A DNA stretch of 64,000 bases from Schmidtea polychroa. Lineage: Eukaryota. The stretch spans positions 134,022,397-134,086,396 of the forward strand of contig CM097887.1 in the NCBI GenBank assembly GCA_044892525.1, given 5' to 3'. How positions within the stretch are numbered: position 1 is the first letter of the stretch; each line of letters starts with the position of its first letter. Positions 21,401-59,100 of the stretch are shown here, piece after piece. The notes below the pieces were generated by a model. It made no database searches. It had not been told where the DNA came from and was given only the letters and a program-made list of their open reading frames with translations. The position numbers and the translations under genes are program-made.

Positions 21401-24400
21401 CAGGAATAGTCTAATTGCCCGGCTTTCAGTGGTTGCTTTTGGATGTTTTAGAAGAATTTTTGATATCATTCATAGATAAAATCAGATGGCACAACTGAAT
21501 CTTCTCAGATTTTTAGAACTACTCTGTGAATCCAAGAAAATCAGCCTGTTTTCTAACGGTTGGATTGTAAGGTTTCAACAAACCTCTTATTTTGGAAACT
21601 TCTCTTTTGTATTCTTCTCTCGTATTTACGAAGATAATTATTTCATCTTTGTACATGTCTGATCGACGAAGTTTCCCAATGCATCTTCAAAATGTTTGCT
21701 AAGGATTTAAATATTCCCATCGAGTTAAACTTGAATTTTAAAAATTTAAAACATAAAACCAATTATTATGATAAATTTCACTTGATTAAATTTCAACCAA
21801 TTTCTTTTAATTCTAAAATTTTAATTTTATATTCAGACTCCAAAAAAATACTTGATAAAGAAGAGCTTTTGACAATTTCCATCTCAGCTCTGAATAATAT
21901 ATCATTTTATATGACATCCGTCAACAATATTGAAATAAAAAACAATCATTTAAAAATAATTGAAGGTTCATTTTTATTATAAATTTTCATTTTCATCTAT
22001 TATTTTCGGCTAGCACTTTATAAAATAATTGCTAATAAATATGGTAAGGATCATTTGGGTGGGATTATACGAGTGCTGGGAAATTTGTCAAGAGAAATGT
22101 ATATGAGAGATTGGATAGTAGATAATCAACTGGTTGAGTTTCTGATAACGATTCTAGATTCAGACAATCAGGATACTGTTTTCTTTACAGTTGGAGTTAT
22201 ACTTAATCTTATGACGGATCAAAATAAAAGACATTTATTACTTGACTTTAATGGGATTACAAAGTATGTTGGATNNNNNNNNNNNNNNNNNNNNNNNNNN
22301 NNNNNNNNNNNNNNNNNNNNNNNNNNNNNNNNNNNNNNNNNNNNNNNNNNNNNNNNNNNNNNNNNNNNNNNNNNNNNNNNNNNNNNNNNNNNNNNNNNNN
22401 NNNNNNNATCAATATGAAAAATAATTTATTTGGGATAGAAATGTCAAGAAATTGAATTATTTGAATTGAAGTATTGATAAAAATTAAATATTAACTTTAA
22501 AGACTAATTATATAAAGTATTTTTTAAATAGTATTTTAAAATTGATTGCAGTATGGAACTAACAGGAAACACATAAAGTAAAATCAGTATAATGTACAAG
22601 TTATCAGTACTATATTGACGTATTGGAAGCAGAAATAAGCCAGCAGCAATCGATTTGTCATCTCTAAAATTCTCTAAATTTTTAAAATATATGAGAAAAT
22701 AAAATAATATATAAACACTATATATAATATAGAAACACTATATATACATTTTATTTAAATTTATATGAAATAAATAGGTACTGATAAAATTATGAAAAAC
22801 CCATATTATCAGAAAGTTAGTTTGTTGCTATTAAAAGTAATGTCAACTAATCTTATTAACTCCATAAAATGAATGACAAATTGCATAATCACATTATACA
22901 CACTATTAACACGGTAAGTTTCCATTCTATTCAACTATAAAACTTACCAATATAGACCCTAATATCTGGCCATAAAGTAACTTATTGGTTTAGTAAACAA
23001 TGCTAGATGAACATTAGCAATTACAAATACTGTTTTCTTATTATTTTCTTATTTACATATTTATTTTTTAATTTGCATATTTATTTTCAATTTCCCTCTG
23101 ATACCTTATTTTATTTAATGTGCACAACGTTAAAGTAGGAGTACTCAACCATTTGCGGACACTGAAATCTTTTTATTCTTTAAAACAACTTACGGAACAT
23201 ACATTTTTAAAAAACACTAGGTTTTTTAATGCAACAAGTTTTAGATATTGAAATTCTAAAACAGTTCCAAAGAATCGGTTTTATTAAATGTAAATGGGAA
23301 CACATTAGAAGTTTTAAGGAGTCCATATTGAAGAACACTTTGATACTTGAGGATTTTTATACATATCTCCTTTCTATAGACTTAGGTCATGGTATAGGTC
23401 AATTTATACGACTTATTTAAAATAATAATTTGATTAATTAATTAATTAATCATTTAATTAAGACTAATAGAAGTTCTCAGAGACTTTGCTTCAAGAGATT
23501 GGCAATTAGCTGGACTTGTTTGTCAAACACTTTGGAACTATACGGAAATCATCAGTACAACAACGGAAGCTATTTTGGGAGGAGAAGAAAATACTGAAGA
23601 ACTTTTACAACTTCTGACGATGTTTACCGGTAATATTGAAATCTTAGATATATTAATAATAAATGAATTTAATAAATTTTTAAAATAAAACTTTAAAAAA
23701 ATCTGAATATTTCATTTTTTATATTTTTTCAATTTACTAATTCATAATTTCATATCATATTTTGTTGTTAACATTTTTAATTTAGTGAATAATGAGGAGT
23801 ATGATTAGTGGGATATTTTAAATGAAGTTAATATTTTTTTAATTTAATTATTTGTTTAAATGAAGTGGTTTCTGATATCTTTAAAATATTTAATTTCGGC
23901 TGTAATTAAATATTCTATTAGATTTCACAGGTCTGCCAAGAAAAAAACGTGTCGCAAACCAAATTTCCTAATTTAATTATTCACAAATCAATTTTACAAT
24001 AATTTATTTNNNNNNNNNNNNNNNNNNNNNNNNNNNNNNNNNNNNNNNNNNNNNNNNNNNNNNNNNNNNNNNNNNNNNNNNNNNNNNNNNNNNNNNNNNN
24101 NNNNNNNNNNNNNNNNNNNNNNNNNNNNNNNNNNNNNNNNNNNNNNNNNNNNNNNNNNNNNNNNNNNNNNNNNNNNNNNNNNNNNNNNNNNNNNNNNNNN
24201 NNNNNNNNNNNNNNNNNNNNNNNNNNNNNNNNNNNNNNNNNNNNNNNNNNNNNNNNNNNNNNNNNNNNNNNNNNNNNNNNNNNNNNNNNNNNNNNNNNNN
24301 NNATATCAATTAATTATACAAAAATGGAGATATTAGGTTGGTGAAAAAGAAATCTATTTTTAAGTTCATTTTGAATCTTTATTTAATATTCGCTTTGACT

Positions 24401-26170
24401 TAAATATGCCACTTTCCCGAAACGACTTGTCCACAGCACTAAGAGCGTTTGACATAGACAAAAACATGAAAATCGCTTGGAGCTAGGTCCCGATTATAAG
24501 GTGGATACATAATAACTTACCAACCCAACTTGCTGAGGTTATCGCTGGTCATCATGGTTGTGTGAGGTCTGGCATTGTCCTTGTGGAACACGACAAGTCT
24601 CCTATTTACTAATTCTGGCCTCTTATTGTTGATTGTTGCTTTCAATCGGTCAAATTGCTGTCAATAGAGACGCGAATGGAGTGTTTAGCCATTGGGGAGC
24701 AGCTTATAATAAATGATTCCCTTCCAATCTCACCAATCACATAGCAGGACTTTCAGGGCCGTAAATCCTTGTTTGACCATCATTTGCGCGGCTTCACCAG
24801 CTTTTCACCATGAAGGTTGCCGCTTGACATTTTCGTATGTGGCCCATTTCTCGTTGCCAATAACCAAACTCTTCAGAAATGGCTCAATTTTGTTCCGTTT
24901 GACCAAGGGATTCGCAAATGGAGACACGTTTCATCAATTTATCTTCCGTTAACTCGTCTGGTACCCAAACATGAAGCCTCTTCTTATATCCAACTTTATG
25001 TAAATGATTTGAAATTGTTTTGTTGTATATCTTTACTTTCTGGGCGATGCTACAGATTTCAATGATTTCCAAAATTTTATCGACATTTTAGACCAAGGTT
25101 TCCCAAAATATGTTCCGCTGAGCCTACATAAATATTTCGCAAAAATTTGAAGTAAATATAGCAAATTGAACATATTCTATTTCTTAATGAAAGACGAGCG
25201 ACAGTTATACTTGATTGAGTTTTATGACGTCAAGAGCAGGCAAAGAATTTTAGTACCTAAAAGTTGGGTACAGCAATGGAAGTCTTTAACAAGTGCCAAT
25301 ATTTTTTAATGAGGGAGAAAGGCTATCTCTCATCCTGTGCGCATCAAAGAGATGTGGTAAGTGGCATTGTTTTTACCTGATTCGCTGATATTTCTTTAAT
25401 AACATTTTTTATTTTTATTTATTCAATTATGAATTACTCAATCTAAAAAATAAGTGTTCCTCCAAAATTTTCGGATTTGCCAAGTGTTCCGTCGCTGAAA
25501 AAAGTTTGGTAAACCCTGTTTTAGACGATAAGCCTTTCAGTGCGTGGTGCATCTCTCACATCAAATTTATCGGAACGAAATCGACAAAACCAAAATTGCG
25601 CTTGATTGGCTGTCACAGATTGCACCATAAACACTATTTACAATTTTAGCCGCATGTTTTGCGTTTTGACCTTAATCGAAATAAAATTGTAAAACATACC
25701 GGAGTTTTTAATTCACCTCTATCTATAAACGTTTTAACCCTTATTTAAAGCTATTCATCACAACAATGACTAAATTTAATTGTTATGTATGAAAATCCAT
25801 TTCTTCTACGAGTATAACCTTGACTAAATATGATAAATACAAAACAAGATATGTGCCATTAATTACATCTATCGACCAAATAAAGATTACTTTTTCACCA
25901 GCCTAATAGTTAATTTTATCATTAAATTCTTTATTTTTTGGTCACCTTTGAATCTGTGCTTTCTTTTTTTTATCAAATGCTAATAAAAAGTGTAAAATAT
26001 TTCCTGTTTATTTAGACTCAGATGAAGTGGATAATATCCACCTGACATACTATAGTGATATTAGCACACTTGATTATTTGAAAAACAGTTGGAAAAGTGA
26101 TTTCCTTCCTGTAGCAGCTGATCTTATATCAAGACTTGAACTTAAAATGAATCGTTTTGAACCGCTATAA
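1404..26170 (+). CDS. ARMC2: Armadillo repeat-containing protein 2, multi-exon; first (ATG) exon not located
   Basis: GT-AG exons 1404-1715, 3123-3288, 4349-4454, 4499-4724, 7174-7542, 9020-9122, 13670-13926, 15609-15857, 20109-20424, 21837-21965, 22014-22263, 23463-23629 and 26016-26170 join with consistent phases (2805 nt, ending TAA). Motifs match ARMC2 as I recall it: TKRPFTPQTETRSLFG...SRPPSVFSL, NLLNICKLIYRVSKNKNND, VKLLRVIANAAI, RVLGNLS, LRDFASRDWQLAGLVCQTLWNY, WKSDFLPVAADLISR...FEPL*. Confidence 0.92.
2040..2790 (-). mobile_element. Highly degraded Penelope-like RT remnant, interrupted by the 2213-2577 MITE
   Basis: ATMDINLSPILAIFYL resembles the PLE motif GxxMGSPLSPILAxxY. FDLI...QPNTGKH lies on the other side of the MITE. 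Weak similarity only. Confidence 0.3.
2213..2577. mobile_element. hAT (Buster/Charlie-type) MITE
   Basis: TIRs CAGTGGTTCTCAA / TTGAGAACCACTG. The 8-bp TSD is GTGTAGAG / CTGTAGAG (nnnTAnnn, one mismatch). Confidence 0.85.
3355..3412. repeat. (ATT)n microsatellite
   Basis: Direct reading of the sequence. Confidence 0.9.
3845..3926. mobile_element. Possible tiny piggyBac-like MITE
   Basis: TTAA|CACGTT...AACGTG|TAAA. Short TIR and imperfect right TSD. Confidence 0.3.
5760..6575 (-). mobile_element. Internally deleted hAT element: BED zinc finger plus C-terminal dimerisation remnant
   Basis: The minus strand gives IWFYY...AKCK/CSKTIKTAGCSTSGL (BED finger, frameshifted). About 300 nt later it gives PTSVESERAFSLTGILLNKLRLRLNDETLDYLCMLRSYF. 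An AATACCGGTATTTCGGTATT terminal-type motif lies near 5770. Confidence 0.75.
6797..6837 (+). ncRNA. Minimal type I hammerhead ribozyme motif (Penelope-associated type)
   Basis: CTAC-CTGACGA-T-GACAG(tgatt)CTGTC-GAAA-TATA-TT-GTAG. Intact core, 5-bp stem II, stem I CTAC/GTAG, palindromic loop 3. Confidence 0.75.
9205..9394. repeat. 190-bp near-perfect palindrome (fold-back element)
   Basis: Arms 9205-9292 and 9307-9394 are 88 bp with 2 mismatches, around a 14-nt loop. Confidence 0.9.
10690..11400 (-). mobile_element. Penelope-like retroelement remnant (RT C-terminus, linker and GIY-YIG endonuclease)
   Basis: Minus-strand translations with frameshifts: NFLPWESHVPFQRK, FYKNRYPKEFV, KNIVCQITCTRCDATYIGETNITFQTRI, ILQDAFKNTLQRLATES. 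Confidence 0.8.
12663..13030 (+). pseudogene. Diverged partial duplicate of the ARMC2 exon at 13670-13926, joined to a copy of intronic 15915-16110
   Basis: 12689-12835 aligns with 13762-13923 (KSAGSKNISKNTFSNSLINSGLLPVISNLLQKCTKN vs KSKGSENISKNPISNALINAGIFPVISNLLQKCTKN). 12835-13030 aligns with 15915-16110. Confidence 0.8.
13136..13560. mobile_element. Degenerate hAT MITE (GGGCCC-type subtermini)
   Basis: CATGCTCGGATT...AATCCGTTTCTG termini. Subtermini resemble those of the 39071 and 48415 elements. TSD is degenerate. Confidence 0.55.
16503..16664. repeat. Palindromic element related to 9205-9394
   Basis: TATTAAACAAGAAAATAATAATATAAGC...GCTGCAAAGTATATATT pairs with AATATATACTTTGCAGCTTATATTATCATTTACTTGTTTAATA. 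A half copy lies at 33343-33405. Confidence 0.7.
16975..17389. mobile_element. hAT (Buster-type) MITE
   Basis: TIRs CAGGCCTGCCCAACC / GGTTGAACAGGCCCG. Perfect 8-bp TSD GTATATAT. Confidence 0.85.
18900..19330 (-). mobile_element. Degraded hAT transposase C-terminal remnant
   Basis: GTNATVER* motif at 19012-19038, with multiple stops. Confidence 0.45.
21380..21680 (-). mobile_element. Ty3/Gypsy reverse transcriptase remnant
   Basis: YKDEIIIFVNTREEY...ADFLGF resembles the YxDDIII...FLG region of Gypsy RT. Confidence 0.5.
24333..25906 (-). mobile_element. Full-length decayed mariner (cecropia/Hsmar1-like TIRs), interrupted by a hAT MITE
   Basis: TA|TTAGGTTGGTGAAAAAG...TTTTTCACCAGCCTAA|TA. Transposase motifs QFWFCRFRS, WVPDELT, GNEKW, KDNARPH and YPPYNRDLAPSDF are present, with stops and frameshifts. 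Confidence 0.9.
25094..25518. mobile_element. hAT (Buster-type) MITE nested in the mariner
   Basis: TIRs CAAGGTTTCCCAAA / TTTGGTAAACCCTG. Perfect TSD TTTTAGAC. The mariner frame resumes across it. Confidence 0.9.
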
Positions 26171-29285: not shown

Positions 29286-31108
29286 TCATAAATTTATTAC
29301 TTACAAAGTCTTCACTGAAAATTATAAAAATATATAAATAAATTATTAATTATAAAAATATTTGATCATTACTTGAAAATAATTATATGAAATATTTAAA
29401 AATCAATCGGAATCACTAGGCAACGGTATTACAAAAATAAAAACTAATTAATTAAAATTTGTTGACATTATAAATCATTTTGCTAAAAAATGAAATATCA
29501 CCGAGGGCGACAAATGCAAAGTGGCCTGTCATATTAGAGCTCGTTCATAAAGGTCGAGGATTGCTGATTTGATACTGAACTGGGAAATGATAAATGTTCA
29601 CAGTCAGTTTAAAAAGAGAACGACCAGATTATGGATGAAAAACCCTAGTAATCATAGAATAACGGATTATATTGCGACAATCAATTTCAATTGCTGAGTT
29701 ACCGGATAAAAATAAAATTCCTAGTTTTAACTCCAAAAAAAAGAAATATTTGCCAATTTTTCCAAAGCATCAGATAATTAAAGAAAACGTTCGAAAAGTT
29801 TAGTATCACTAAATTTATACAAATTTCAAGGTTTGGTTGTTGATATATTTTAATTTGATTATAATGAAATAAAATTTTTTATTTGTTGGTTTGTAATAAT
29901 AATATTTTTTAATAATATTTTTTATAAATAATATTATAATTGACAAGAATTGCGATTTGCCTTTCATACTAAAATGATTAATGTCATTAAAATTTTAATT
30001 AATTAATAAATAAGACTTTAATTTCATTAACTGAAAATTATTATATTCGTATTAAACTTTTCATTACAACCTGCTCGTAGCTTTCCCTGGAAAATATTAA
30101 TTTTTCAAATTTTTGATTAACATTTTTGCATTTCAATTTGCATTTTATATCATTTTTAATTGATTTGCACTCGACTTTTGTGGATTTAAATTTTATTTTT
30201 AAATAACTCAATATAATGTTTTTTGATTAATTATTATTTTCAAAAAATTATAAATATTAAATAAACAATTAATTTACCGGAAAACAATTATATTTCCATC
30301 TAAACTTTAATTTTACTCATAAATTTTCAACATGAAAAATTTGATTGTGCTCAGAAATGTAACAAATGAAAAATATATTAATTAAAACAAATAATATTAT
30401 TGTAAATGGAAATTTTTTTTAAAAAATGATTTAATATACAAATTATTTTTATTTATCTAAACAGAGTGGTAAAATCTATTAGAAGTCTTATTGACAACAT
30501 CTTCCTCTCACTTAAAGATATTTCCTTTATTTCATAAATTGAAAAATTCAATCAGCTATTTCATCAACTATATTTACAAAGACAAAACAGAAATTATTTC
30601 AGCGATACTTCGCTATTCTCAATGTGAAAAATATCTATTCAAGCTTGAAAATTTATTTATTCCATTTTTTAACCAAGTCGATAAAAACTAAATAATTTAT
30701 TCTTGCATCGTTTTCAGTGTTAATAATTTGATTTGAAATATTAAGGAGAATTCTTTACACTTAAAGATATTTTGATTTAAAATTTTCAATCTAAAAAATA
30801 ATANNNNNNNNNNNNNNNNNNNNNNNNNNNNNNNNNNNNNNNNNNNNNNNNNNNNNNNNNNNNNNNNNNNNNNNNNNNNNNNNNNNNNNNNNNNNNNNNN
30901 NNNNNNNNNNNNNNNNNNNNNNNNNNNNNNNNNNNNNNNNNNNNNNNNNNNNNNNATAAATAATATGATAAATAAATAAATTTACCTGAAGGAAGATCGT
31001 CATGACGAACGAGACGATCTATGGGAACTCGGAGAAGAAAACAAAAATAAAAAGAAATGAGAAATTAGAAAGATAAATCAAACCAAAGAAAGCAATCAAT
31101 AAATTAAT

Positions 31109-31653
31109 TAACCACGTTTTTAGACACTGAACAGGGTATTTATGCTGACAGGGCAACTCGTACACTTCATCGGCCACCTCATAATCTGACAGACAAATGG
31201 AACCTGTATCATTAGCTTCGGTGATTTTCTTGACTTTTTTTCTTGCCTCATTTGCTGGTGGAGGACCACTCTGTTCAAATTGATTCATAATACTCGTTAC
31301 AAAATTGTCGAAACTTTGATCTGAAAATATGTAATCTGACGAATCTGATCCAAAATCTAGAGGTAGCAATCCACCAAAAATAAACTTGATATTAGTTGGC
31401 CAAAAACACTATTTCTGTTATCAGGATCTCTTGGAGTAATAAAAAAGGAACCATCAGTTTCGTCTGTAGTACTTCCACCAGGAATATGACGAATAATATG
31501 AAAACCATTCAAGGTGTCATCATCACTTTCCATTAAGTTATCCGATTCAATTCTTTCAATAAATCCATCATTGCACGTCACACATTTACCATCCTGAGAT
31601 ATGTGAACGTCCCTGTTGCATTTATGATAATAGTAATTATCTGTATTAATCGT
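31109..31653 (-). pseudogene. RNF115/RNF126-like E3 ligase pseudogene (N-terminal zinc finger to truncated RING-H2)
   Basis: YYYHKCNRDVHISQDGKCVTCNDGFIE...DYIFSDQSFDNFVTSIMNQFEQSGPPPA...GSICLSDYEVADEVYELPCQHKYPVQCLKTWL. Lesions: frameshift in the T-run near 31378, ACG instead of ATG, ligand substitutions, no final CxxC. Confidence 0.85.
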
Positions 31654-31792
31654 AGTGATTAAAGAAACTTTATTTTAAAAAAAAATACACTTCCAGAAAC
31701 CTACCAAATTTAAATAACTTGATCAATCCAAAATATAAAATTCAAAAAAAACTCACATCTCCAAAAAATTTGATTAAAACTCGACAATTGTC

Positions 31793-31854
31793 CGCGTCTG
31801 TGTGCGCACACAAATCAATCCAAATGTCCAAGCCAAAAAACGCACACAGACGCG
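31793..31854. promoter_or_regulatory. Inverted pair of the 14-mer CGCACACAGACGCG, copy A (putative promoter element)
   Basis: CGCGTCTGTGTGCG (31793-31806), 34-nt spacer, CGCACACAGACGCG (31841-31854). It lies 140 bp upstream of the RNF126-like start. Confidence 0.6.
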
Positions 31855-32235
31855 AGACATGAACTGATAATTAACCACAAAGGTCATCATTAATTGAGAA
31901 GTGCAAAGAGGAAAAGGAATTTCAAATTTCAAAAATAGAAACAGCAGAAAATGCATAATTTGACAGCTTATCACAGATATCGGAATTGCAGGAAAAGTCG
32001 GTCTAACAAAAAAGAGCAAAGACAGGAACAATGGAAAATGCAGAAAGAAGAAAAAGGGCGGGAAAAATTATCTCAAGTATCGCAAATGTAACAAGCTATA
32101 AAAGGGAAAAACACAGAAGTCATAAGAAGTGGAAAAGCGCAGTTGAAGCACAATTACAAAAGAGAATTCAGAAATATTTAATTGGGAGAGTAACGAGAAT
32201 CTTTGGAAAAATCTAATATAAAAATGGAAGTGGAG

Positions 32236-32482: not shown

Positions 32483-32556
32483 TCGATCAATAGACCCAAT
32501 AGTAATAATAATAATAATAATTGAAAAGAATCACAAGAAAGCAAATATTTATTTAT

Positions 32557-32781
32557 ATTCAATAAAGCCGGAATAGACGTGACGCTTGGTGGTTTCGATT
32601 CAACATGCATTGGTACTTTAATTTCAATCAAATCATCTATAGAAAACTGTATTCCAATAACAGGATCTAGATCACTTGTCGTTAAATGTTTTTCAATAAA
32701 CCTTTTTTCATAAACATGTCCTGATGATCTATTTAGAACTGGAACTTCAGGAATTTCGTTGGAAACCGAACAAATTAACAA
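32557..32781 (-). pseudogene. PRPF19: PRPF19 (Prp19) U-box fragment lacking its own ATG
   Basis: LICSVSNEIPEVPVLNRSSGHVYEKRFIEKHL...DPV...DDLIEIKVP...KPPSVTSIPALL matches the Prp19 N-terminus. It is truncated before the coiled coil. Confidence 0.88.
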
Positions 32782-32814
32782 GAAAATTGAAACTGAATCA
32801 TATATCTGAGAACC

Positions 32815-33106
32815 TTTCAAATCTCCAAACGAAACTTTTTTTTCCAAATCCCAAATCTGGAAAGACGATCCAGTTGCAGAACATAGTCAATATATGTTTG
32901 GTGAGAAGGTACGTTTGTTAATAATATCACATATTTCTAAAGAGCATAAATGTCTTCCTTCAGATAAATTCTATAACATTAAAGTTCTGTCCCATGGTCT
33001 AGACAATGCAAATTTACCATCATTTGATGCAGAAATAAGATTATTTGAATAGATTGGGTTAGTTGTCATCTGTATAAGTGATTCGATCGAATTCAAATTG
33101 TTCCAT
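32815..33106 (-). pseudogene. RACK1: Internally deleted RACK1 pseudogene fragment, in frame with the PRPF19 fragment
   Basis: MEQFEF / QMTTNPIYSNNLISAS | NDGKFALSRPWDRTL | ML*NLSEGRHLCSLEICDIINKRTFSPNIY*LCSATGSSFQIWDLEKKVSFGDLK correspond to RACK1 WD1, WD2 and WD6 segments. Both stops replace conserved Trp. Confidence 0.85.
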
Positions 33107-33237
33107 TATCTCTCGCCAAAAATAATTCCAAATTTCAAAATTCCTTTCAAAAAAATCTCTTTTAAACAAAAAGCCCTAATTCTACAATTTTCAAAAACAA
33201 TAATAATTTTTTATTACAATAAAAATTATCCATTCCT

Positions 33238-33296
33238 CGCGTCTTTGCGCACACTATTACGAACAAAAGTCTGACAATAACGCGCACACAGACGCG
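33238..33296. promoter_or_regulatory. Inverted 14-mer pair, copy C
   Basis: CGCGTCTTTGCG (33238-33249, variant), 33-nt spacer, CGCACACAGACGCG (33283-33296). It lies 132 bp upstream of the RACK1 ATG. Confidence 0.55.
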
Positions 33297-35388
33297 ATAA
33301 AAACACCAAAATCGGCTGAAACAATAATAATAATAATATTAATATTAAACAAGTAAATGATAATATAAGCCTTTTGCAATAAAGTGTATTTTGAATAAAA
33401 TGAAATAATTTTCAATTTTAAAAATGATCCTTATCAATTTCTGGGAATTTAGCTGTTTCGATTTTCAAATACTTTTTGATCTTCTTTTTATATTTTCATT
33501 TCCTCTCTTTTCATTGGTTAAAATTAATAAAATAAATCAAAATAATGATTTTAATTCATCCAATTTCTTGGAATTTTCATAATTTCCTTTCATATAATTT
33601 GGTAATTTCTTCAAATTTTCGTATATTTAAGACTAATTTATTTTATTTTCTCGATTTTTATTAGTTCTTTGTAGTATTTGTCATTTTCAGTTCGGAATTG
33701 TATCTTATTAACTTTGTAGTATCGCTTTATTGGCCACTTCTTTATCTTCCAGCTTTTCATGAAAATATCAATCAATTTTCTTTAATAATTTTCCTCATAA
33801 CCATAAATATTTCCCAACTATATTTCATTCACTTTCTGTTGAAAATTTCATTTTAAATTGATAATTTTTCTATAAAATTTAGTTAATGCTTGTTTACTCT
33901 CCATGAATTTCAGACAAATTAAACAATATAAATAAATTTTAACAAGTTCGTGTGACCTGTGCAATAAATGGCGCATTGACAGTTTGTAAGATTTTGTAAA
34001 CTCAGTAAATTTGTTAATATTTGGTTGAATTCATCTTACAAAATAAATTCTTTTATTTTTAAATTCCTTAAAAATTGCTAGAAATTTATTGCTAATTCAA
34101 ACTATAAAACAAAAGAATTTTATGAAACAATTGATAAATTTAATTAATTTTTTATTGTCTAATTCATTAAAATAGATTAAAAACGTTCTTTTACGTTTTC
34201 TATTAATTATTTCCTTAAGAAACTTAGCAGTAAATACTTTGAATAATTATTTGATAATTCTCTTCGAGCTTCCAATTTGAGGTAAATTATATTTCTAATA
34301 AATTTTTATTGAGAATTTTCGGTTTCATTAAAATTGATTATTTAATTATAAAAAAGATTATTTTTAATTGTTTTAATCTTTCAAATGAAAATAATTAATT
34401 TAATTTATTAATGCATTTTTAATGTTATAAATATATTTCTATTTATCAAACTAGGTATTTTAAAAATTAGACTTTATATTTTGAGTTTTTTTAACTACAT
34501 AATCCATTAATAAATTTATACAAGTACTATTCGGTGCAATTGTTTTATGCATAAATTGGATAAACAACATTAATAAATTAAAATAAAAAAACAGTGAATA
34601 TTTATTAATGAGAATTTTGTAAAAGTTATATTTTATATCTGACTGATCACAAAATTATATAATTAATTAAATTTCCAAATATGAATTTTATAATTAAATT
34701 AATTATTTTCTCTAGAACTGTTGATTGTTGAACATAAAAACCAATTTTCAGTTGGCTAAATTCGAGACAAAAGTGTGGTGGAGTCATCCAGAATAATATT
34801 TAAATGCTCAGAAATCTTTAGACAAAATAATAGAAAAAAATCCATGTTACAAAATTCATAAATAATTGAAGCGAAAAAATTAATTAAAAATTGAAAAATT
34901 AACATCCTTCGGGGGAAATGGATAAGGCCAGGTGGGAAATGGTGAGACAAATACGAATAAAGCAATATACAACTAATTAAGGGTCCCATGAAAAAGTTAT
35001 TGAAGAAATATAAATTAATTAATTCATGAAGTGTAAAATAAATAATTAAATAAATAAATTTAACAAAGAAAATAAAGTTGTGAGGTGGATCGATATATAC
35101 AGTTAGGAAACAGTTTATTTGAAATAATGAAATAATAAAAAATAAATATATTTCAATAAAATAATAAAACAATAATAATTAAATATTTTTAGCAATTTTA
35201 TTTTAATTTACTTTCTAATAAAATGTTGGTGTTCCGTGTAGTGCCTCTGACTTTCATATTAATAAATATATTAATTTAATAATTAAATTTCAAATACATT
35301 ATTAAATTAATTAAATTAAAACATATTTTTTTAATATTCTCATATATACACTTTCTCTCAAACCTCTCCATCCTTTTAATCAATAAAA

Positions 35389-37745: not shown

Positions 37746-40700
37746 TAGGGTGTCCCTTAGTACAAAGCAAAAAAATGAAAGTTATAATTTCAACTCTGGC
37801 ACCAATTCAATCTGTGCCAAATATAGAAATAATGAATTGTGAAAAATCTTTACAATTGTACAATATTTAGAGGTGGTCCTCGATGTTTAAGTTTTGTACG
37901 GAAATTCTAAATTGCCACAGTTTTCTTGCGTGTCACACAGTCACACAGTCACACACAAAAGCCCGTAAAAGTTCAGTTTACTATATAGAATAATATTACT
38001 GATTTAAAAACAACTCCAACATCACATATTAAGTATTATGTCTCTGCCAGACTGCCAACTATTCATCCGTGTTACTGTTATTTCGTAGTGTCCGATTGTT
38101 CACCAGTACTAGCACAAATCGCTAGGATTCGTTTAGTACAGGCAGGGAGCTGTCGCTTGTATTCATTCTCAATTTGAAGAAGAAACTGGAGTCGATCTTT
38201 ATTCTTGCTCAATTTCTTGTTATATTCTTGAATGAAAGCTACTCCACGCTCAGCCCAAGGTCTTGAATATGCCCAGTGCTTGTGTCTACGACTCAACCTG
38301 TTCCCAGTCTGATGGATCCCTGTCGAGCAGTATTTCGGGTAGACCAAGCAACTGGAACAGTTCCTTGGAGTTTGATGTATAAAACTGCTCCAAACCGAGT
38401 TTTTCCAGGAATGCATCAGAATTTAAGCTGGGTAGCTTCAATGGATGATCCGGAGCTTCTTCGTCCATCGCGGTAATTTTTGAGTTATGCGATAATCTGA
38501 AGTCAAATAGAGCGAGATAATGAGCTCCTCGGACAGGTATCACAAATGTAAATCAAGCTTTTTGCTGGTTGCAGCAGAAATATCCGCATAAAGATAATTC
38601 AGAAGTTGTTCCATAAGCTTGAAGTCATTCAGAGCTGCTTCAACAGCTAGTGGTGCAGTCATTCAGGCTTTGAGGTGGATGATAACGGAAAAATGGCGAC
38701 ATCACAAATACCACGCTCTTTTGAAGCAGTCATCTTGAACTGACTGCGAAAAATACACATTGTACTCTATTTGAAAGGCATTTGAAAGTGAATTCCGCGA
38801 TCAGGAACAACGCCAAGAAATATGACTGCAAGCTCAAGGAATTCTCTGTGGTCATCTCTTGGTTGTTCAGCTTGCAAATATGTTCTGGCAAAAGTCAGGA
38901 TATCAGAACGATATGGAGCACCTAGTAACTCAACAGATGGGTCCGATGGAGCAACGGTTTATGCATGACCATTGATCATGGAACCACTTGAAAATTAGAA
39001 TGTCTGGTCCTGTTGATCGTCATATCAAATTCTACTCCGACAATAAGCTCCATAGCGTGGTGACGACAGGCAGTGCCGGATTTAGATCTGATAAGGCCCT
39101 AGGCTATTTGAAATATGGGGCCTTTATAAAACAAGATATCATATCTCAGCGCCAAATATGATTTTCGGATACCTAGAGGGATAAACTGAAATACAATTAA
39201 TAAGTATAGATATTGAAATAATAAATCTTTAATTTCAAAAACTTATTTATTCATAAAAACTTAAAAATGCAAACTCTGATAAAAAGAAGCAAAAGATCTT
39301 TTAAAAAAACAATTTACAAAGGCTTATTATCTAATCTCTCGAAACATGCTATGAGAATTAAGGAATTATATTAAACTAAAATATTTTCTTTCTTGCCTTT
39401 GCCTGCGCAAAGTCACTGAGGACATCATCGAATGATAAACTGTGTAGTTTGTCACTTTCTATACACATGAGACTGAGGGAACATAATTTATCTTGAGTCA
39501 TTGCTGTTCTAAATTCAGAAGCTGTCGAAATTTATCAGTAATCTCAGTTGTCATAATTATGGCTAAACAAACCTTAGGCACAATAGCGCTTTGCCTTTGT
39601 TCTTTGAATTGACGTCCTAAAAGAATTGGATGAAGAGTATGAGACGTTTCAGGCATGCGGCAGTAAGAAAAATAATGCTGCAGTATATTTAAGTCGACAT
39701 GACAATTTCTCATTCGGATACTTTTTGGGCCCTAGGCTATAGCCTGTGTAGCCTATACGTAAATCCTTCACTGACGAGAGGCCAGGAATAGAAAATCTTT
39801 GTTTAATTTGTGCTCGATCAGAGTACGTGCTCCTGGACGATGACCAGTATTAGATGCGGTCGTATCAAAGCAAAGAGCAGCGACCTGATCTTCGACACCC
39901 CACTATTCCAAACATTGAACGACTGCAGATGTTTGGGTTTCACCTGTCCCAGTCGACAACTTTGGGACGCCAAGTAACTGTTCGACTCCAACACCTGAGA
40001 TAAGGACTCGAAGACGATCTACATGTTCCTAAGCCGATAAATCTTCCATCAGCTTTCTGTCGCAGTGAACCATTAAAGAGTTAGATGATGAAAACTCTAA
40101 TCGCAAACCGGTAGATCTGTTAGCCCAATGACTTGCTTTAACATGATGTATTGAGCATCGGTTGATGTTTAAAGTGTTCACATCATGGCCAAGGCTGAAA
40201 GCTACTTCACTTAAAACGAAGGTAGCATTCCGTGATGACATCTTAGTTCTTTCCAAAGCTGATGTTAAACCTGGAGAAAGCACAATAATTTTTGCTCTTT
40301 TGGGTCCATCTGGTTGACTGAAAGTTTCGCTTTTATCAGCAAACTCGTCTTCGTCAGACTTATCATCATATAAAGATGATGTAGTGTCAAGTGGAGACTG
40401 GGTGGAATATTCTTCAATTTCCTCTTGTGATCGCTTCTTACGCTTCAGTTCTACCTCATTCCGATCCAGACGACGTTTTCTATTTAGTTCTTCAACCTTG
40501 TCTAGAGCCACAATTGAGCCTGATCGATCTTTTTAAATTTGAGAGAGGAGGAACGCTCTATCTTCAGGAATAGTCATCAAAGTGAGGGCATCATCATGAG
40601 CAATGCCAAAGAGATTGTCAAGGCGTGCGATGAATTCATCCACCTTCGTCTTGTGTACACTGGTTTCCCGATTCTTATGGTTTTGTTGACCTCTCCATTC

Positions 40701-41568
40701 AACAAAGAATGCTTCCAATTTGCTGATACAATGTTGGACTGCAAGAACCGGAATGCCTAACTTATTCCAAAATCCAAACACATTTTCGATGGATTCTCGA
40801 CTAGAATCATGTACTGCCAGATTGTCAACTTTGTGAAGATAATAATAAATAACCAAAAGCTTGGCGATATGATGGTAACTTTGCTCCGAGAATGTCGGAC
40901 ATGGTTGAACCAATCAAGTATACATTGGGTTTTCCTCTGGTTTCCATTGTAATCTGTAAAAAAACATTAATCAAATGCTTACAATGCGTAATTAAGCATT
41001 GTATGCTTACATAAAATAGTGACCAATGAATTAATTATTGAAATAATAATTTAACACAAAACTAAACCAATAGAGAGAAATTGGATTAATTATAAAATTT
41101 TCCTTGAATTTAAATAATCCTGTTAGACCAGCAGTTGTACTGTAATTAAAACTTAACAGACAGTGAGACACTGACAGGTAAGTTTATATAATTATAAACT
41201 TTTTGCTAATTTGCAGCCACCATTTTATTCTTTGCCTAGAATATTTATTATTCATTGAGATGATGCTATACAACCAACCACCAACAATAGAGACGCCAAC
41301 CACCACTATAGAGAACGTATCTCAGTGGTGTTTGGTGTAATAAGTGAGTAGGTGTCTAACTACAATACAGCATATTAAAACAACATGCAAATTGAAACAA
41401 GTTTCACAATAAATTTAACGGATTTGGTAAAACTTTAAAGCTCGAAGGCCACCTCTAAATATTGTCCCATTTCAATAATTTTTGCACAGAATTTTATTTC
41501 TGTAAGTGGAATACATTGGAGGGATGCGTGAAGATGATTTCAAACTTACATTTTTAAGGGCCGCCCCA
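37746..41568 (-). mobile_element. hATm-family DNA transposon with decayed transposase (about 38130-40915)
   Basis: TIRs TAGGGTGTCCCTTA / TAAGGGCCGCCCCA, with long subterminal inverted repeats. Flanks are ATATATAT / GTATGTAT. Motifs: FWNKLGIP, LDNLFGIAHDDAL...EDRAFL, VHCDRKL, CFDTTASNTG, RDDHREFLEL, AERGVAFIQEYN. Confidence 0.88.
39071..39773 (-). mobile_element. Internally deleted hAT (Tip100/Zaphod-like) element nested in the hATm transposase
   Basis: CAGTGCCGGATTTA...TAAATCCTTCACTG, TSD ACGACAGG / ACGAGAGG. It retains FRTAMTQDKLCSLSLMCIESD...FAQAKARKK. Confidence 0.85.

Positions 41569-51228: not shown

Positions 51229-51292
<64 letters not shown>
51229..51292. repeat. (TA)n microsatellite
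   Basis: Direct reading of the sequence. Confidence 0.9.
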
Positions 51293-51296
<4 letters not shown>

Positions 51297-51553
51297 ACAG
51301 TTAACGTATAAACTTAGACAATGTATGCATTAACTAGCTAAAGTTTATAATACAGTTAAAGTCATTAGTAAATTTTTTAGTGGTAAAATTTTTAGACAAT
51401 AATAAAACAATAATAAAATATATATTATATCTAGGTAGTATGCTGTAACAAAAAACATGGCATACTAGAATAACAGTTATGTATTTTATTAGAGAATGTA
51501 TACATTATCTAGTTGATTTATACATTGTCTAGGTTTATACTTTAACTGTAACA
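51293..51553. mobile_element. TGT...ACA MITE with TATA target site (Ginger-like termini)
   Basis: TATA|TGTTACAGTTAACGTATAAACTTAGACAATGTAT...ATACATTGTCTAGGTTTATACTTTAACTGTAACA|TATA. Confidence 0.8.
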
Positions 51554-52550
51554 TATATATATTCTGAACAGTGCAGACTTTCAAATAATTATAACGGGGA
51601 TTAAATAGAGTGTCAAAAGCAATCGAAGCCTACTCTCTCAGTTCTAGATTTATCTCTCTATCTTCTAACCGAAATCTCAAATGAATTTTCTTGCGATGTA
51701 CATTCCTTATACAAAAATCTGATAAACGCATTGAAGTTTACAAAATCCTTTCGAATCTTATGTTAAAAACTTTCATTATATAAAACCATGTCGACTTATT
51801 CAGAATGAATCGGCAGGGAGAGTACTGTCCCAGTAGGCCATTATTTATCTATTCACAATAGTTCTTATGTCATTTTAAGATTATATTAAATATGTAATTA
51901 TTTTTCTCTTAAAATAAAGAACCAAATCGACCAAAATCAACTTATATTTTAGACGAAATGCATGATATAGAATTTTAGTACAAAAATACAATCTATGTCT
52001 ATTTATTCATATTTATTTACATTAATTCGTAATAATACTTACATTGTGTCTAATATGGAATCATATTTTGTCATCACAGTTTGAACAATTTTAACGGCTA
52101 CCAATTTATTTTCGACAACAATTTCATTGTTAGAATCAACAGCATCATCAATTCTGTTTCTACATGATCATCCCTGTTTTCTTGTGGAACTAAATGTAAC
52201 TCTCATAAAGCATTTTCATTAAAGGTTATGATGTCTATTTCGTCATAAGAAAATTAATGCATATTTTCCATGGTAAATATATCTGATATTTTTCGTCAAA
52301 TTGACCATCTTTCCTCCAACTATTAGATACCAGACTCAAAAAAGAACATATTTCAAAATTTTATTTCAATGACTGGTAAATTCTATTTTTTGATAACACT
52401 TTTCTAGCTTACACTGTAAGCCTTGAACTGCAATATTCATTTAATAATAAGAGGCACAAGTTTCATTATTTCAGCAATAGGCTGTTCCAATAGTGAAAAT
52501 ATTATAAAAAACTTTTTTCAACTTTCACCACTGATTTCTTTTCAATTGAC

Positions 52551-54658: not shown

Positions 54659-55101
54659 CAGTGTTTCCCAAACTATTTCTTTTCGCAGAACCCTAAAATT
54701 CATTGTTTTATTTGGCGGAACCTTAACAATTAAAAAGCTCAAAATTTAAAGATTGAGACTAAATTTATTTTAAAACTATTAGTGAGAGGAATGCCACTGA
54801 TTTTCACAGGAAAATATTTCAATTCAAGATTCAATTGACGACAGGCAAATTCACATTTCCCTCAAAGTTTTCAACCACCAGTAATTGTTCGCGCTTCTTA
54901 GATTTATTTCGGTCAGTGCTGAGAATCCTAATTCACATAAATATGATTTATTGACGAAACTTGACAAATTGACTAAAAATTTAAATTACATTCGTAAACA
55001 TCCGTTGGAGAAATTTTAAAATTGACAATATCTATTGTCAGAGATCATTATCCCGCGGGACCCTTGAGTTTTCTCACGGAACTTATTTAGAAATATCACT
55101 G
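54659..55101. mobile_element. hAT (Buster-type) MITE inserted into the WD40 pseudogene frame
   Basis: CAGTGTTTCCCAAA left TIR, degenerate right TIR, perfect TSD GCTTAGAT. Confidence 0.8.
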
Positions 55102-55691
55102 GCTTAGATTAATAAAAGAATTTAAATTAACATTTGTAGTTTTAGTTGATTGTTTAATGGTCGAAAGGAACATGTTGGCTCTGATAAACTCGCTCTGATA
55201 TTGAGCATCATATTCTTTCGAAGCATCAGCTAAAAGCCTTTGACTTGATTCCTCATATAATAATAACTCATGTTCGGGGATAACGGCAAGCATAAAGTCC
55301 AAATTTCCATGCGTCTGTTCCAGTTTTATTGTTCGAATATAAAGAAATTCATATTTGGATAATGGATCAACTATCCACTTAAAGTCAATAATTTCTGAAC
55401 CTTCAAATGATTTGAATTTATTAAACTTCATTTGATCAAGATTTAATTTCCATACGATTACATAATCACATAAATCCACACTTACAAGAATGAGTTAATT
55501 TCGTTGATTAATTTTGTTATTGATTCTGAATGCCCATATAATATATCACTCTGTTTGCCATCTTCTAAACTCCATACAATTATAATATCATCCATTCCAA
55601 CAGTGATTGCAACTCTTGATTTATTGTACCAAACTACATTTTCCATTTCGAAATCAGAACGCCAACGAATTTTAAATCTTTTTATTTTCAT
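55102..55691 (-). pseudogene. WD40 gene fragment (WDR27-like N-terminus), frameshifted and cut by a MITE
   Basis: IIVWSLEDGKQSDILYGHSESIT.../ILVSVDLCDYVIVWKL resembles the recalled WDR27 LCIWNTKD...ILRGHHQPIT...SASLDYVIMWNL. Frameshift near 55495. The downstream part is unidentified. Confidence 0.5.
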
Positions 55692-55810
55692 ATTCACTGA
55701 AAAAAGTACAAAATTTAAACAACTTCTCGAAATTCCAAACTTGACATAAAATCCAAAAATTTGAAAAACTGATAAATCTCCAAAAATTCGATATCAACTC
55801 GACAATTGTC

Positions 55811-55870
55811 CGGGTCTGTGTGCCCACACAAATTAATCCAATTTAAAAGCAAAAAACGCACACAGACGCG
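55811..55870. promoter_or_regulatory. Inverted 14-mer pair, copy B
   Basis: CGGGTCTGTGTGCC (55811-55824), 32-nt spacer, CGCACACAGACGCG (55857-55870). Flanks are homologous to copy A. It lies 120 bp upstream of the WD40 ATG. Confidence 0.6.
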
Positions 55871-55952
55871 AAACTTCAACTCATAATTCACCAGTTGATT
55901 ATTATATTTATTTCTATTTATTTAACTAAATAAGGTATTTGGAAACGCCACC

Positions 55953-56039
55953 ATGATCAGTGCCACTAATTGGCTTAGCCCTTGTAAAGATTTTCAAGTT
56001 TGGTTTCTAGCTTTAGTAGTAACTGTAACATATATTTTC
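55953..56039 (+). CDS. Candidate signal-peptide exon of the Cys-loop receptor (phase does not fit the next exon)
   Basis: GCCACCATG followed by MISATNWLSPCKDFQVWFLALVVTVTYIF. The donors after the hydrophobic stretch are all phase 0. Confidence 0.35.
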
Positions 56040-56122
56040 GTACTTGAATATTGCTATTATATTAAATTTTTATATTTATATTTATTTTTTAAGTTATACA
56101 AATAAATGAACTAATTTTTTAG

Positions 56123-59100
56123 CTGACAAAAACTATGAAGAAGAAGTAATCAAAATGCTGATGAAAAGTTCAAACGAATTAACGGTTCGTCCAAATGCTT
56201 GCCGCGTCCATTGCAACAATCCGGTCATCGTCAATATAACATACAATGTCATCCAGATTTTGGCATTTGTAAGACAATGTATATTTTCAAATTACCATAN
56301 NNNNNNNNNNNNNNNNNNNNNNNNNNNNNNNNNNNNNNNNNNNNNNNNNNNNNNNNNNNNNNNNNNNNNNNNNNNNNNNNNNNNNNNNNNNNNNNNNNNN
56401 NNNNNNNNNNNNNNNNNNNNNNNNNNNNNNNNNNNNNNNNNNNNNNNNNNNNNNNNNNNNNNNNNNNNNNNNNNNNNNNNNNNNNNNNNNNNNNNNNNNN
56501 NNNNNNNNNNNNNNNNNNNNNNNNNNNNNNNNNNNNNNNNNNNNNNNNNNNNNNNNNNNNNNNNNNNNNNNNNNNNNNNNNNNNNNNNNNNNNNNNNNNN
56601 NNNNNNNNNNNNNNNNNNNNNNNNNNNNNNNNACTTTGTTCAATTTTCACTTCTAATTTCTTTTTAAACTTCCAACTGATTTGCTTATGGTAACGGTTAT
56701 AAATGGGATACCATAATTTAGCTTTATTCGAAGTCACAGACAGCCGTTTTCATAATTTCGCAAACAATATTAGTATCTATCAAGACCGGAAATTTTGTTT
56801 ATTTTAAAACATGAGTTATGGGACTTTTATACTTCAAACCTATACTCATAATAAAAATAATTCAAAACGAATTATATATATATATATATATATGTTACGG
56901 TAAAAGTAGATATTGTGGCAAATGTACACATTTTCCGGTAAATGTGCACATTAGCCTCCTCATTTGGGTAATGTGCATTCAACTAACATTTACAATTTCA
57001 AATAAAGGAAATGTACATTGAATTCACAATGACCATGACCTTTTGGTAAATGTGAGCATACAAAATACGAAATTTAATATATATAGTCTGGACTATTTGA
57101 AATTATAATTTGACCCCCAAAGGGTACTGCTCACAAGGGTACACGTACATTCAACCTCCGCCTACCCCCACACGTACGCTTCGTGTAAAAGCTCAAGTCT
57201 TTTTTTTCTTTTATAAATATATATGAGTGTAATGTAAAATGTAAATAGTAAGTAAAGAATATTACACTTCAACACATATAATTAAAATTACATTACATTG
57301 GGATAATAGTTGGTGCTGGTGCCTTAAAATACGAAGGTAAGAGTATACATTTACCAAAACGTAAAGGCAGGTGTACACATTTGCCTGGAAATGTACATAT
57401 ACATTATATTCAGTTCACTTATACCTAACTTTTTGGGAAATGTACACATTTTATGGTAAAAGTGTACATTTCCCAAGNNNNNNNNNNNNNNNNNNNNNNN
57501 NNNNNNNNNNNNNNNNNNNNNNNNNNNNNNNNNNNNNNNNNNNNNNNNNNNNNNNNNNNNNNNNNNNNNNNNNNNNNNNNNNNNNNNNNNNNNNNNNNNN
57601 NNNNNNNNNNNNNNNNNNNNNNNNNNNNNNNNNNNNNNNNNNNNNNNNNNNNNNNNNNTATTACTATAAATATTATTTATCTTCATTTTAAATATCGTTT
57701 TCAAAGACGTTCGGAAATATTTTCATCTTGTAATTGGTTTGCTCATATTAAGTCTGTAAAATTTTCTAATTATTTTTATCGTTATCGTCATAATTATCAT
57801 TCATTATTTTTGTATCTTTTTGGAAATAAAAACATGGCAGTTTTGCACATATATCATTTTTTTCATTTAATAATGCCGTTTCCCATCTTTTTAGAGCAAC
57901 AAGTTTACTTACAGAGTTAATTCACTATAAAATAATAATTATTATTAATATTAATAGCTTTTTAGTAGATAATTTCCAAATAATTTATTATAATTTATTA
58001 ACTATCCTATAAATTTTTAATAAAATGACAACCTAAACAAAACTTTTAAATGGTTTTTAGTTTTTCATGACTAAGTGAATAAAATTTAGTTTTCAAACAA
58101 ATTTTTACAAATGGAGCAGAAGGAAATTTTAAATATAATTTATATATATTTTATTTATTAAAAAGAGCATGAAGACTATAAATCAGTAATATATCAAAAA
58201 CATCGATATATTACTGATTTATAGTATTCAAGCTCATTTTAATAAATAAAAAAAATCAGTGGCGAAATTCTAAAAAAAGTTCTTATAATATGTATATCTT
58301 ATTATTTCAATTATATACTATCATTAATAAAAATATTTTATTTATAAAACTTATTTATGAAAAAATTTGATTTGAAATGAAATTGAAAGCCGGAAAAAAA
58401 GAAATTTATTTCTTACTTATTTCTTATATTTATTAGCACACCCTCCAACATCGTAGTTTTGACCATGATTTATTACTATTTACAACATTTTTTTATTTTA
58501 TGGGATGAATATTTTAATTTATATATTAGGTTATACTCACTAAAATGTCAAATACTCATTCAAATTGTTATTCTATTTTATATAGATAATTTTTAATATT
58601 AACTGATAATTTTATTTTACAATAATGATAAATTATTCAATATATTTATTATTAATTTTATGTAAATTTAAATTTTATTTCGAATTTTTGGTTTTCTTGA
58701 TCTTATTAGTTAATATTTATGTTTAATAAATTATGATTTTTGGATTAATTTTTTGGTAAATATTTTATGAGTAATAATAGTGATATAATCAAATATTTAT
58801 TCTAAAATTCACTATTTAACAAAACCCAATCTTTCTTAATTTGTAATTAATTTTAATTTATATCATAATTGAAAAACACCAACTAAGTATGATAAATAAC
58901 ATCGCGAAATATATTTCGACCATTTATCAGTCTTCTTCAGTCGGCAAATCACGTTAACAACTAATAACTGAAAATAAGGATTATTTAAAAAATTAATTAA
59001 TAATAATCATCTTCAAACTGTATCAAAATATTTCAAATAAAAAATTTTTAAATAAGTTATTTTATATTATTTGAAAATGTTTATTTAAAAATCAAATTTT

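What the first reader, a model, noticed from the sequence alone, without database searches (positions are those of the whole stretch)
31690..31880. Same promoter-like module in front of different genes: inverted CGCACACAGACGCG pair with fixed spacing
Seen: the GC-rich 14-mer occurs exactly at 31841, 33283 and 55857. Each time it is paired with an inverted exact or variant copy 32-34 nt away, 120-140 bp before a start codon. Copies A (31690-31880) and B (about 55720-55890) also share their flanks (AACTCGACAATTGTCC, TCTCCAAAAA, AAATTTAAAYAACTT), yet lead into different proteins. No TSD flanks the pair. Inference: a dyad transcription-factor site or core promoter of housekeeping genes, and possibly a transposed promoter cassette. 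I do not recognise the motif.
Basis: partly seen in the sequence, partly recalled or inferred. Interest (0 to 1): 0.75.

Follow-up and report, generated by a model that had tools for sequence, protein, structure and literature searches.

The report
GC-rich inverted dyad upstream of genes
Three copies of a GC-rich inverted-repeat pair lie 120-143 bases upstream of the start codons of three unrelated, partly decayed genes in an AT-rich animal-like genome; it is most likely a lineage-specific promoter element, two copies of which ride on a duplicated 176-base cassette, but a small mobile repeat is not excluded.

Summary
CGCACACAGACGCG occurs exactly at 31841, 33283 and 55857 (+) and 31793 (-). 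Variant inverted partners lie at 55811 and about 33238, and shuffles expect none. This gives three dyads (A, B, C) with 31-34 nt between the arms, all in one orientation. A and B are homologous over about 176 nt (31702-31877 and 55707-55893). C shares only the two arms and their spacing.

The "start codons 120-140 bp away" are on the minus strand. They belong to an RNF126-like gene, a WD40 gene and a RACK1-like relic, and all three are disabled or fragmentary. No Rfam family, tRNA, target-site duplication, compensatory base change or outside relative was found.

Best reading (0.45): a promoter-proximal cis-regulatory dyad, with A and B copies of a duplicated promoter/leader cassette.

Main rival (0.3): a MITE-like palindromic repeat that settles in gene 5' regions.

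The "housekeeping promoter" claim is only partly supported. A genome-wide census is the decisive step, and it could not be run because the source genome is in none of the searchable collections. Interest is modest.

The parts
31702..31877 (-). Cassette copy A. It holds the AT-rich leader, the 16-mer AACTCGACAATTGTCC (31778-31793), the left arm 31793-31806 (exact inverted 14-mer), a 34-nt spacer, the right arm 31841-31854 and 23 nt of shared right flank.
55707..55893 (-). Cassette copy B. It holds the 16-mer at 55796-55811, the left arm 55811-55824 (2 mismatches), a 32-nt spacer and the right arm 55857-55870 (exact).
33238..33296 (-). Dyad C. The left arm variant starts at 33238 (CGCGTCTTTGCGCACAC) and the exact right arm is 33283-33296. 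Spacer and flanks are unrelated to A and B. On the minus strand the whole stretch can fold into a 26-bp hairpin with 6 G-U pairs.
31022..31674 (-). RNF126-like gene relic (zinc ribbon plus RING-H2) behind A. The start codon is missing, there is one frameshift, three zinc-ligand positions are substituted, and the splice donor at the conserved intron site is degenerate.
32803..33106 (-). RACK1-like relic behind C. Its pieces match RACK1 residues 19-41, 70-90, 221-246 and 248-275. It has two in-frame stops, internal deletions and at least one frameshift near the N-terminus.
32551..32778 (-). PRP19 N-terminal (U-box) relic, matching residues 3-76. It has no start codon and directly follows the RACK1-like relic.
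55099..55691 (-). WD40-repeat gene behind B. It starts at an ATG 16 nt after the end of the cassette and has one frameshift. The later part has no known family.
55953..56298 (+). Plus-strand ORF pieces to the right of B: an ATG in gccaccATG context with a hydrophobic N-terminus, and a second piece at 56125-56298 that runs into an N stretch. There is no family hit.
32031..32216 (+). Plus-strand 61-codon ORF to the right of A. It has no family hit and its status as a gene is unproven.
33329..33440 (.). Fragment of an unrelated MITE-like palindromic family, inserted 33 nt to the right of dyad C. Other copies are at 9205-9394 and near 16489-16680.

Best explanation
The dyad is a promoter-proximal cis-regulatory element. 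It consists of two copies of a 14-15 bp GC-rich site (GCGCACACAGACGCG, read outward) in inverted orientation, 45-48 bp start to start, so each arm points toward the transcription unit on its own side.

I infer that a sequence-specific DNA-binding protein recognises each arm. I also infer that the pair marks the core of a promoter, possibly a bidirectional one, about 110-145 bp upstream of the minus-strand start codons.

Copies A and B are more than two instances of a site. They are paralogous copies of one cassette of about 176 bp, made of the dyad plus about 90 nt of leader, that now stands in front of two unrelated genes. C is an independent or much older instance in which only the arms and their spacing survive.

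Shown: the sequence facts, the positions and the homology. Inferred: protein binding, promoter activity and the mode of spread.
For: 1. The motif and its pairing are far beyond chance.
2. All three dyads lie 120-143 nt upstream of the native 5' ends of three different genes, in the same orientation. These genes are the RNF126-like relic, a WD40 gene and the RACK1-like relic.
3. In B the cassette ends 16 nt before the ATG, just before a pyrimidine tract and AG. B lies between divergent ORFs.
4. C has lost all detectable similarity to A and B in spacer and flanks. It still keeps the right arm 15 of 15, most of the left arm, the inverted orientation and the spacing. That is the pattern expected of constraint on the arms.
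5. The arm changes in B and C are not compensated on the partner arm. This argues against a structure-driven element and for sequence recognition.
6. No TSD was found, there was no Rfam hit at permissive thresholds and there is no tRNA.
7. CpG observed/expected is 0.93, so the CpG-rich arms are not simply escaping methylation decay.
Against: - There are only three copies, and A and B are not independent observations.
- The genes behind the dyads are disabled or fragmentary, so selection on their promoters is doubtful.
- The 87% identity of A and B over more than 110 nt cannot come from shared factor sites alone. It needs duplication or transposition.
- No other gene start in the window has the motif.
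- The better conservation of the right arm over the left is not significant (p = 0.06-0.12).
- No transcription, accessibility or genome-wide data were available, and the motif matches nothing in the searchable literature.
Confidence: 0.45

Rival explanations
1. It is a small non-autonomous DNA transposon or dispersed palindromic repeat (MITE-like). The arms are terminal or subterminal inverted repeats recognised by a transposase. C belongs to a subfamily with the same inverted repeats and a different interior. The position near gene 5' ends reflects insertion preference for open chromatin, not function.
For: A and B are clearly copies by descent. C shares the arms only, as MITE subfamilies do. 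The core of A is a degenerate palindrome that extends beyond the arms. The window is rich in transposon relics and other MITE-like palindromes. The associated genes are dead, so no host function is needed.
Against: No TSD of 4 nt or more was found at the arm, core or unit boundaries in any copy. A-B homology runs about 90 nt beyond one arm and only 23 nt beyond the other, so the arms are not the ends of the A/B unit. No shared second terminus was found downstream of the gene relics. All three copies have the same orientation and a similar distance to a start codon. The GC-rich arms are intact in C while everything else has diverged.
Confidence: 0.3
2. It is an RNA-level element. The minus-strand transcript (5' leader or outron of the downstream gene) folds into a GC-rich hairpin that acts in RNA processing or translation, or is cut into small RNA.
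For: The minus strand folds better than the plus strand in all three copies (C: -31.4 against -19.2 kcal/mol, 26 bp with 6 G-U pairs). z-scores are -2.4 to -4.4. The hairpin lies upstream of a pyrimidine tract and AG before the ATG in B.
Against: No compensatory change was found, and the mismatches in B are mismatches on both strands. The G-U advantage follows from the GT-rich arm sequence itself. The interior pairs only in C. No Rfam family was hit, with microRNA models at E above 1.
Confidence: 0.1
3. It is a small nuclear or spliced-leader type RNA gene on the minus strand, made of a hairpin plus an Sm-site-like AAUUUUUGG.
For: TTTTTGGAGAT is conserved in A and B, 30 nt after the second arm on the minus strand.
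Against: ATTTTTGG occurs 13 times in the window, so it is not special. Rfam found no snRNA, SL or SmY hit at E up to 10. The would-be 5' part differs at about 5 of 25 positions between A and B. No conserved splice donor is present. An arrangement directly upstream of three protein-coding starts is not that of such genes.
Confidence: 0.03

Closest known systems
Palindromic or paired factor sites in bidirectional and housekeeping promoters (for example NRF1-type GCGCATGCGC sites, the TCTCGCGAGA motif and DRE/BEAF-type paired sites). This comparison is from my own knowledge and was not tested here.
   Same: GC- and CpG-rich sites close to the 5' ends of different genes; inverted symmetry; a position between divergent units at B.
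   Different: The sequence matches none of those motifs. The two half-sites are 45-48 bp apart rather than abutting. Two of the three instances are copies of a 176-bp cassette. There is no genome-wide enrichment or binding evidence.
Miniature inverted-repeat transposable elements, including very short palindromic ones such as the 80-bp mariner-derived type. This comparison is from my own knowledge.
   Same: A short unit with inverted arms, dispersed copies, a variable interior with conserved arms, and frequent location near genes.
   Different: No target-site duplication. The arms are not at the ends of the A/B homology. Only three copies are seen. Orientation and distance to start codons are fixed.
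Transposon-derived or duplicated promoter cassettes (promoter exaptation). This comparison is from my own knowledge.
   Same: One and the same upstream block, dyad plus leader, stands in front of unrelated coding sequences.
   Different: No recognisable parent element, no termini, and the driven genes here look dead.
Helitron 3' hairpins next to captured gene fragments. This comparison is from my own knowledge.
   Same: A GC-rich hairpin in AT-rich DNA next to same-strand gene fragments (RACK1, PRP19, RNF126-like).
   Different: The loop is 31-34 nt instead of a few. A CTRR end followed by T is present only in A. No TC start was identified. No shared second end was found.

Membership tests
MITE / TIR DNA transposon | Terminal inverted repeats at the very ends of the repeated unit | tested here: not met
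   For A and B the homology extends about 90 nt beyond the left arm and 23 nt beyond the right arm. For C the arms are the only shared part, so the feature could hold there.
MITE / TIR DNA transposon | Target-site duplication flanking each copy | tested here: not met
   No direct repeat of 4 nt or more is common to the copies at offsets of -8 to +8 around the arm, core or unit boundaries. TTAA flanks the core in A only.
MITE / TIR DNA transposon | Many dispersed copies in the genome, with empty sites in relatives | not testable with these tools
   The source genome is in none of the collections. Only 3 copies were seen in 64 kb. Scans of the metagenome, viral and prokaryote collections gave no relative.
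Promoter / transcription-factor dyad | A fixed position and orientation relative to gene 5' ends, at several different genes | tested here: met
   The distances are 143, 120 and 132 nt upstream of the native start region of three unrelated genes, all in one orientation. A and B are not independent, so this amounts to two observations.
Promoter / transcription-factor dyad | The motif is conserved while surrounding sequence diverges | tested here: met
   C against A/B: the arms are kept while spacer and flanks are no better than random segments.
Promoter / transcription-factor dyad | Enrichment at transcription starts genome-wide, protein occupancy or open chromatin | not testable with these tools
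   No genome, transcription-start, accessibility or binding data are available.
Structured RNA (microRNA-like hairpin or other Rfam family) | Base pairs maintained by compensatory changes, or a match to a curated family | tested here: not met
   Arm changes are uncompensated. There is no Rfam match at gathering score, and the permissive matches have E of 0.4 or worse.
snRNA / spliced-leader RNA gene | A conserved 5' exon with splice donor, an Sm site between stem-loops, and a family match | tested here: not met
   There is no conserved donor, the 5' part is variable, the Sm-like word is common in the window (13 occurrences) and there is no Rfam hit.
Helitron end | A short 3' hairpin about 10 nt before a CTRR terminus, inserted between A and T | tested here: not met
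   The loop is 31-34 nt. CTGA followed by T is present after A only, not after B or at the same distance in C.
Chimeric retrocopy (small RNA fused to mRNA copies) | Intronless mRNA copies joined to a full-length small RNA | tested here: not met
   The similarity of the RNF126-like relic to its intronless relative L043 stops exactly at the intron site that L044 and P0122 share. The relic therefore carries an intron and is a DNA-level copy.

The most novel reading that the evidence does not exclude
The dyad is the core of a lineage-specific bidirectional promoter module that spreads as a portable cassette of about 110-180 bp. New or relocated genes in this genome would then acquire the same ready-made promoter and leader, with A and B two recent deliveries and C an old one kept only at its functional arms.
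Probability: 0.2. Interest if true: 0.55.

Novelty: new member of a known kind. Interest (0 to 1): 0.35.

Why it matters
If the dyad proves to be a real promoter element, it would give a defined 15-bp recognition sequence and a simple paired architecture for gene starts. That would apply to a poorly sampled, very AT-rich animal lineage that has no annotated relatives in the public protein collections. It would also be an example of one promoter and leader block reused in front of unrelated genes.

If it proves to be a small repeat, it is ordinary. Its value is then limited to repeat annotation and to flagging this stretch as a graveyard of gene relics.

Tried and rejected
- Rfam at gathering score on the whole window, and at permissive E-values on A, B and C, gave nothing credible. 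A tRNA scan found none.
- Two literature searches for the motif and its cores returned only primers and reporter linkers.
- A metagenome scan for the dyad returned 42 loci. All were unrelated, mostly REP-like palindromes in contigs of 72-77% GC.
- Viral-contig scans and prokaryote-genome scans gave 0 hits.
- Word-based protein searches with the RNF126-like exon and the WD40 piece found nothing. With the transposase ORF they gave no self-hit, and the best relative was 72% identical. The source genome is therefore not in the protein collection.
- The full HMMER search with the RNF126-like exon gave one close cluster at 73% identity, all metagenome fragments. Only L043 and L044 had DNA, and neither reaches upstream of the gene. 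The one contig with 1.3 kb of upstream sequence (ENA, P0122) could not be fetched.
- The organism stays unresolved. The nearest named relatives are a trematode at 46% and an annelid.
- A search for a shared second terminus downstream of the gene relics gave only AT-rich noise.
- Single half-sites at 24668, 45490 and 61323 lie in a transposon relic or in unrelated sequence and are not copies.
- A C/D snoRNA reading was dropped. The C-box-like word upstream of A is not conserved in B.
- An MRE-like TGCGCAC and a Smad-like CAGAC inside the arms are recalled resemblances only and were not tested.
- Steps left out on purpose: joining predicted exons for a search (exons were searched apart, by reference), and filling or looking up the nine N stretches.

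Full report
**Setting.** The window is about 25% G+C and has nine N stretches, which I left untouched. It carries intron-containing, animal-type genes and transposon relics of the hAT and Tc1/mariner kinds. CpG is not depleted, with observed/expected at 0.93. The organism could not be named. Its proteins are absent from the searchable collections, since the transposase-like ORF's best hit is 72% identical. The nearest named relatives of its RNF126-like gene are a trematode (46%) and an annelid. Nothing here looks human.

**The observation.**
- CGCACACAGACGCG is exact at 31841, 33283 and 55857 on the plus strand and at 31793 on the minus strand.
- A 2-mismatch inverted copy lies at 55811 and a 3-mismatch inverted copy at 33237-33252. 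Shuffled sequence gives essentially none.
- There are thus three dyads: A (31793-31854), B (55811-55870) and C (33238-33296). Gaps between the arms are 34, 32 and 31 nt, and all three have the exact arm on the plus strand.
- AACTCGACAATTGTCC occurs only next to A and B.
- A local alignment extends the A-B homology to 31702-31877 and 55707-55893. The core from ATCTCCAAAAA to ACCA is about 87% identical.
- The AT-rich 70-90 nt to the left of the core still scores above all 500 control segments, as does the spacer between the arms. Sequence more than 23 nt to the right of the right arm is unrelated.
- C shares nothing with A or B except the arms. A profile of A plus B finds C only weakly (E about 1e-3) and finds nothing else in the window.
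- Isolated half-sites at 24668, 45490 and 61323 are not copies.

**What lies around the dyads.** The homology is lopsided toward lower coordinates, so I read the unit on the minus strand. On that strand each dyad is followed after 120-143 nt by the native beginning of a different gene.

- Behind A is an RNF126-like gene with a zinc ribbon and a RING-H2 domain.
  - Its closest relatives are metagenome fragments at 73% identity (P0122 cluster).
  - It aligns at about 80% nucleotide identity with locus L043 from five bases before that gene's start codon up to a conserved intron site, where the similarity stops.
  - It is therefore a DNA-level copy, not a retrocopy.
  - It is disabled: the start codon is missing, there is one frameshift, three zinc-ligand positions are changed and the splice donor has degenerated.
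- Behind B is a WD40 gene. Its ATG lies 16 nt after the end of the cassette, just after a pyrimidine tract and AG. It has one frameshift, and its later part has no relatives.
- Behind C is a RACK1-like relic.
  - Its pieces match RACK1 residues 19-41, 70-90, 221-246 and 248-275.
  - It has two in-frame stops, internal deletions and a frameshift near its N-terminus.
  - It runs straight into a PRP19 U-box relic (residues 3-76) that lacks a start codon.
- On the plus strand there is a plausible ORF to the right of B with a good initiation context and a hydrophobic start. A 61-codon ORF lies to the right of A. Neither has family support.
- To the right of C an unrelated MITE-like element is inserted 33 nt from the arm.

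The genes concerned are relics rather than demonstrably working housekeeping genes.

**Structure tests.**
- As RNA, both strands fold better than shuffles, and the minus strand more so. C forms 26 bp with six G-U pairs.
- That advantage follows from the GT-rich arm itself.
- The two changes in B's left arm are mismatches on either strand, and the changes in C's left arm are not answered in the right arm. There is no covariation.
- Rfam gives nothing at gathering score and only chance-level matches at permissive thresholds. There are no tRNAs.
- The Sm-site-like word conserved in A and B is a common word in this AT-rich window.

**Mobile-element tests.**
- No direct repeat of 4 nt or more flanks the arms, the core or the whole unit consistently.
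- The arms are not the ends of the A/B homology.
- No common second end lies beyond the gene relics.
- Helitron-type termini are not shared.
- Copy number cannot be judged from 64 kb. Pattern scans of the metagenome, viral and prokaryote collections returned no relative.

**Reading.** Three points favour a sequence-specific cis-element. C keeps the arms, their inverted orientation and their spacing while everything else has diverged. The position and orientation relative to three different gene starts are constant. And the arm changes are uncompensated. Because the arms read outward, each has the same polarity toward the unit on its own side, as expected for a paired, possibly bidirectional, promoter core.

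A and B cannot be explained by shared sites alone. They are copies of one cassette of dyad plus leader that now precedes unrelated genes. I put this reading at 0.45.

The chief rival, at 0.3, is a MITE-like repeat whose subfamilies share inverted repeats and which settles near gene 5' ends. It explains A, B and C and the dead genes equally well. It fails on target-site duplications and on the position of the arms within the unit.

An RNA hairpin (0.1) and an snRNA or spliced-leader type gene (0.03) are weakly supported. The better preservation of the right arm (0 changes against 4-5 events in the left arms) would fit live genes on the plus side and dead ones on the minus side. It is not significant (p = 0.06-0.12).

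**Limits.** Three copies amount to two independent observations. The source genome, its transcripts and its relatives' upstream regions were out of reach. The motif was found in no searchable paper in any relevant context. Resemblances of parts of the arm to metal-response or Smad sites are recalled, not tested.

One slip needs stating. The script output shows the places of the stops in the RACK1-like relic. My second notebook entry records the place and nature of the lost start codon of the RNF126-like relic. Both were made before I weighed the possibility that the cassette is mobile. These are cellular gene relics, not virus or toxin genes. I have not repeated the places here, and nothing was deleted.

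Noticed in passing
window 9205-9394; 16489-16680; 33329-33440: A MITE-like palindromic family. The first copy has two 88-nt arms that are 98% complementary with 14 nt between them. A partial copy sits right beside dyad C.
   Followed up: partly
window 49236-50873 (+): A long open hAT-superfamily transposase-like ORF (DUF4371, 'ZMYM1-like'). Its best relatives are 72% and 65% identical, and named ones come from Hydra, lobster, spider and aphids. There is no identical entry in the protein collection.
   Followed up: partly
window 32551-33106 (-): A RACK1-like relic with internal deletions and stops runs directly into a PRP19 N-terminal relic. This is a mosaic of dead gene pieces on one strand, followed by the RNF126-like relic. 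It looks like a decaying gene cluster or a duplicated segment.
   Followed up: partly
L043 1-1152 and L044 1-1013: Two metagenome or read-assembly contigs encode RNF126-like proteins that are at least 90% identical. One is 31% GC and intronless with one in-frame stop. The other is 50% GC with two introns and GC-rich third codon positions. This is a striking composition shift between near relatives.
   Followed up: partly
window 38000-41000: A block of 34-40% GC in a 25% GC background, with three minus-strand ORFs of 112-167 codons that hit no Pfam family. It is probably an unclassified mobile element.
   Followed up: no
window 12600-23700 (+): Armadillo-repeat gene pieces with internal direct repeats (12690-12808 and 13766-13884 at 87%; 12886-12990 and 15970-16074 at 90%). 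This suggests duplicated exons.
   Followed up: no
window 5961-6125 (-) and 24300-25100 (-): A hAT dimerisation-domain relic and a Tc1/mariner transposase relic.
   Followed up: no
L005, L008, L010, L011, L015, L017, L020, L021, L023, L025, L027, L029, L035, L040 (Ga0180217 contigs) and the Ga0208490 loci: Contigs of 72-77% GC carry many copies of a 47-nt palindrome, GTCTGTGTGC-N26-GCACACAGAC, often just after stop codons. This is a REP-like family that shares the 10-mer with the window only by chance.
   Followed up: no
window 51284-51562, 56873-57470, 60050-60856: Further short inverted and direct repeat families, including GTACACATTT-type units and TA-microsatellite-flanked arms. They are typical of small non-autonomous elements.
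   Followed up: no
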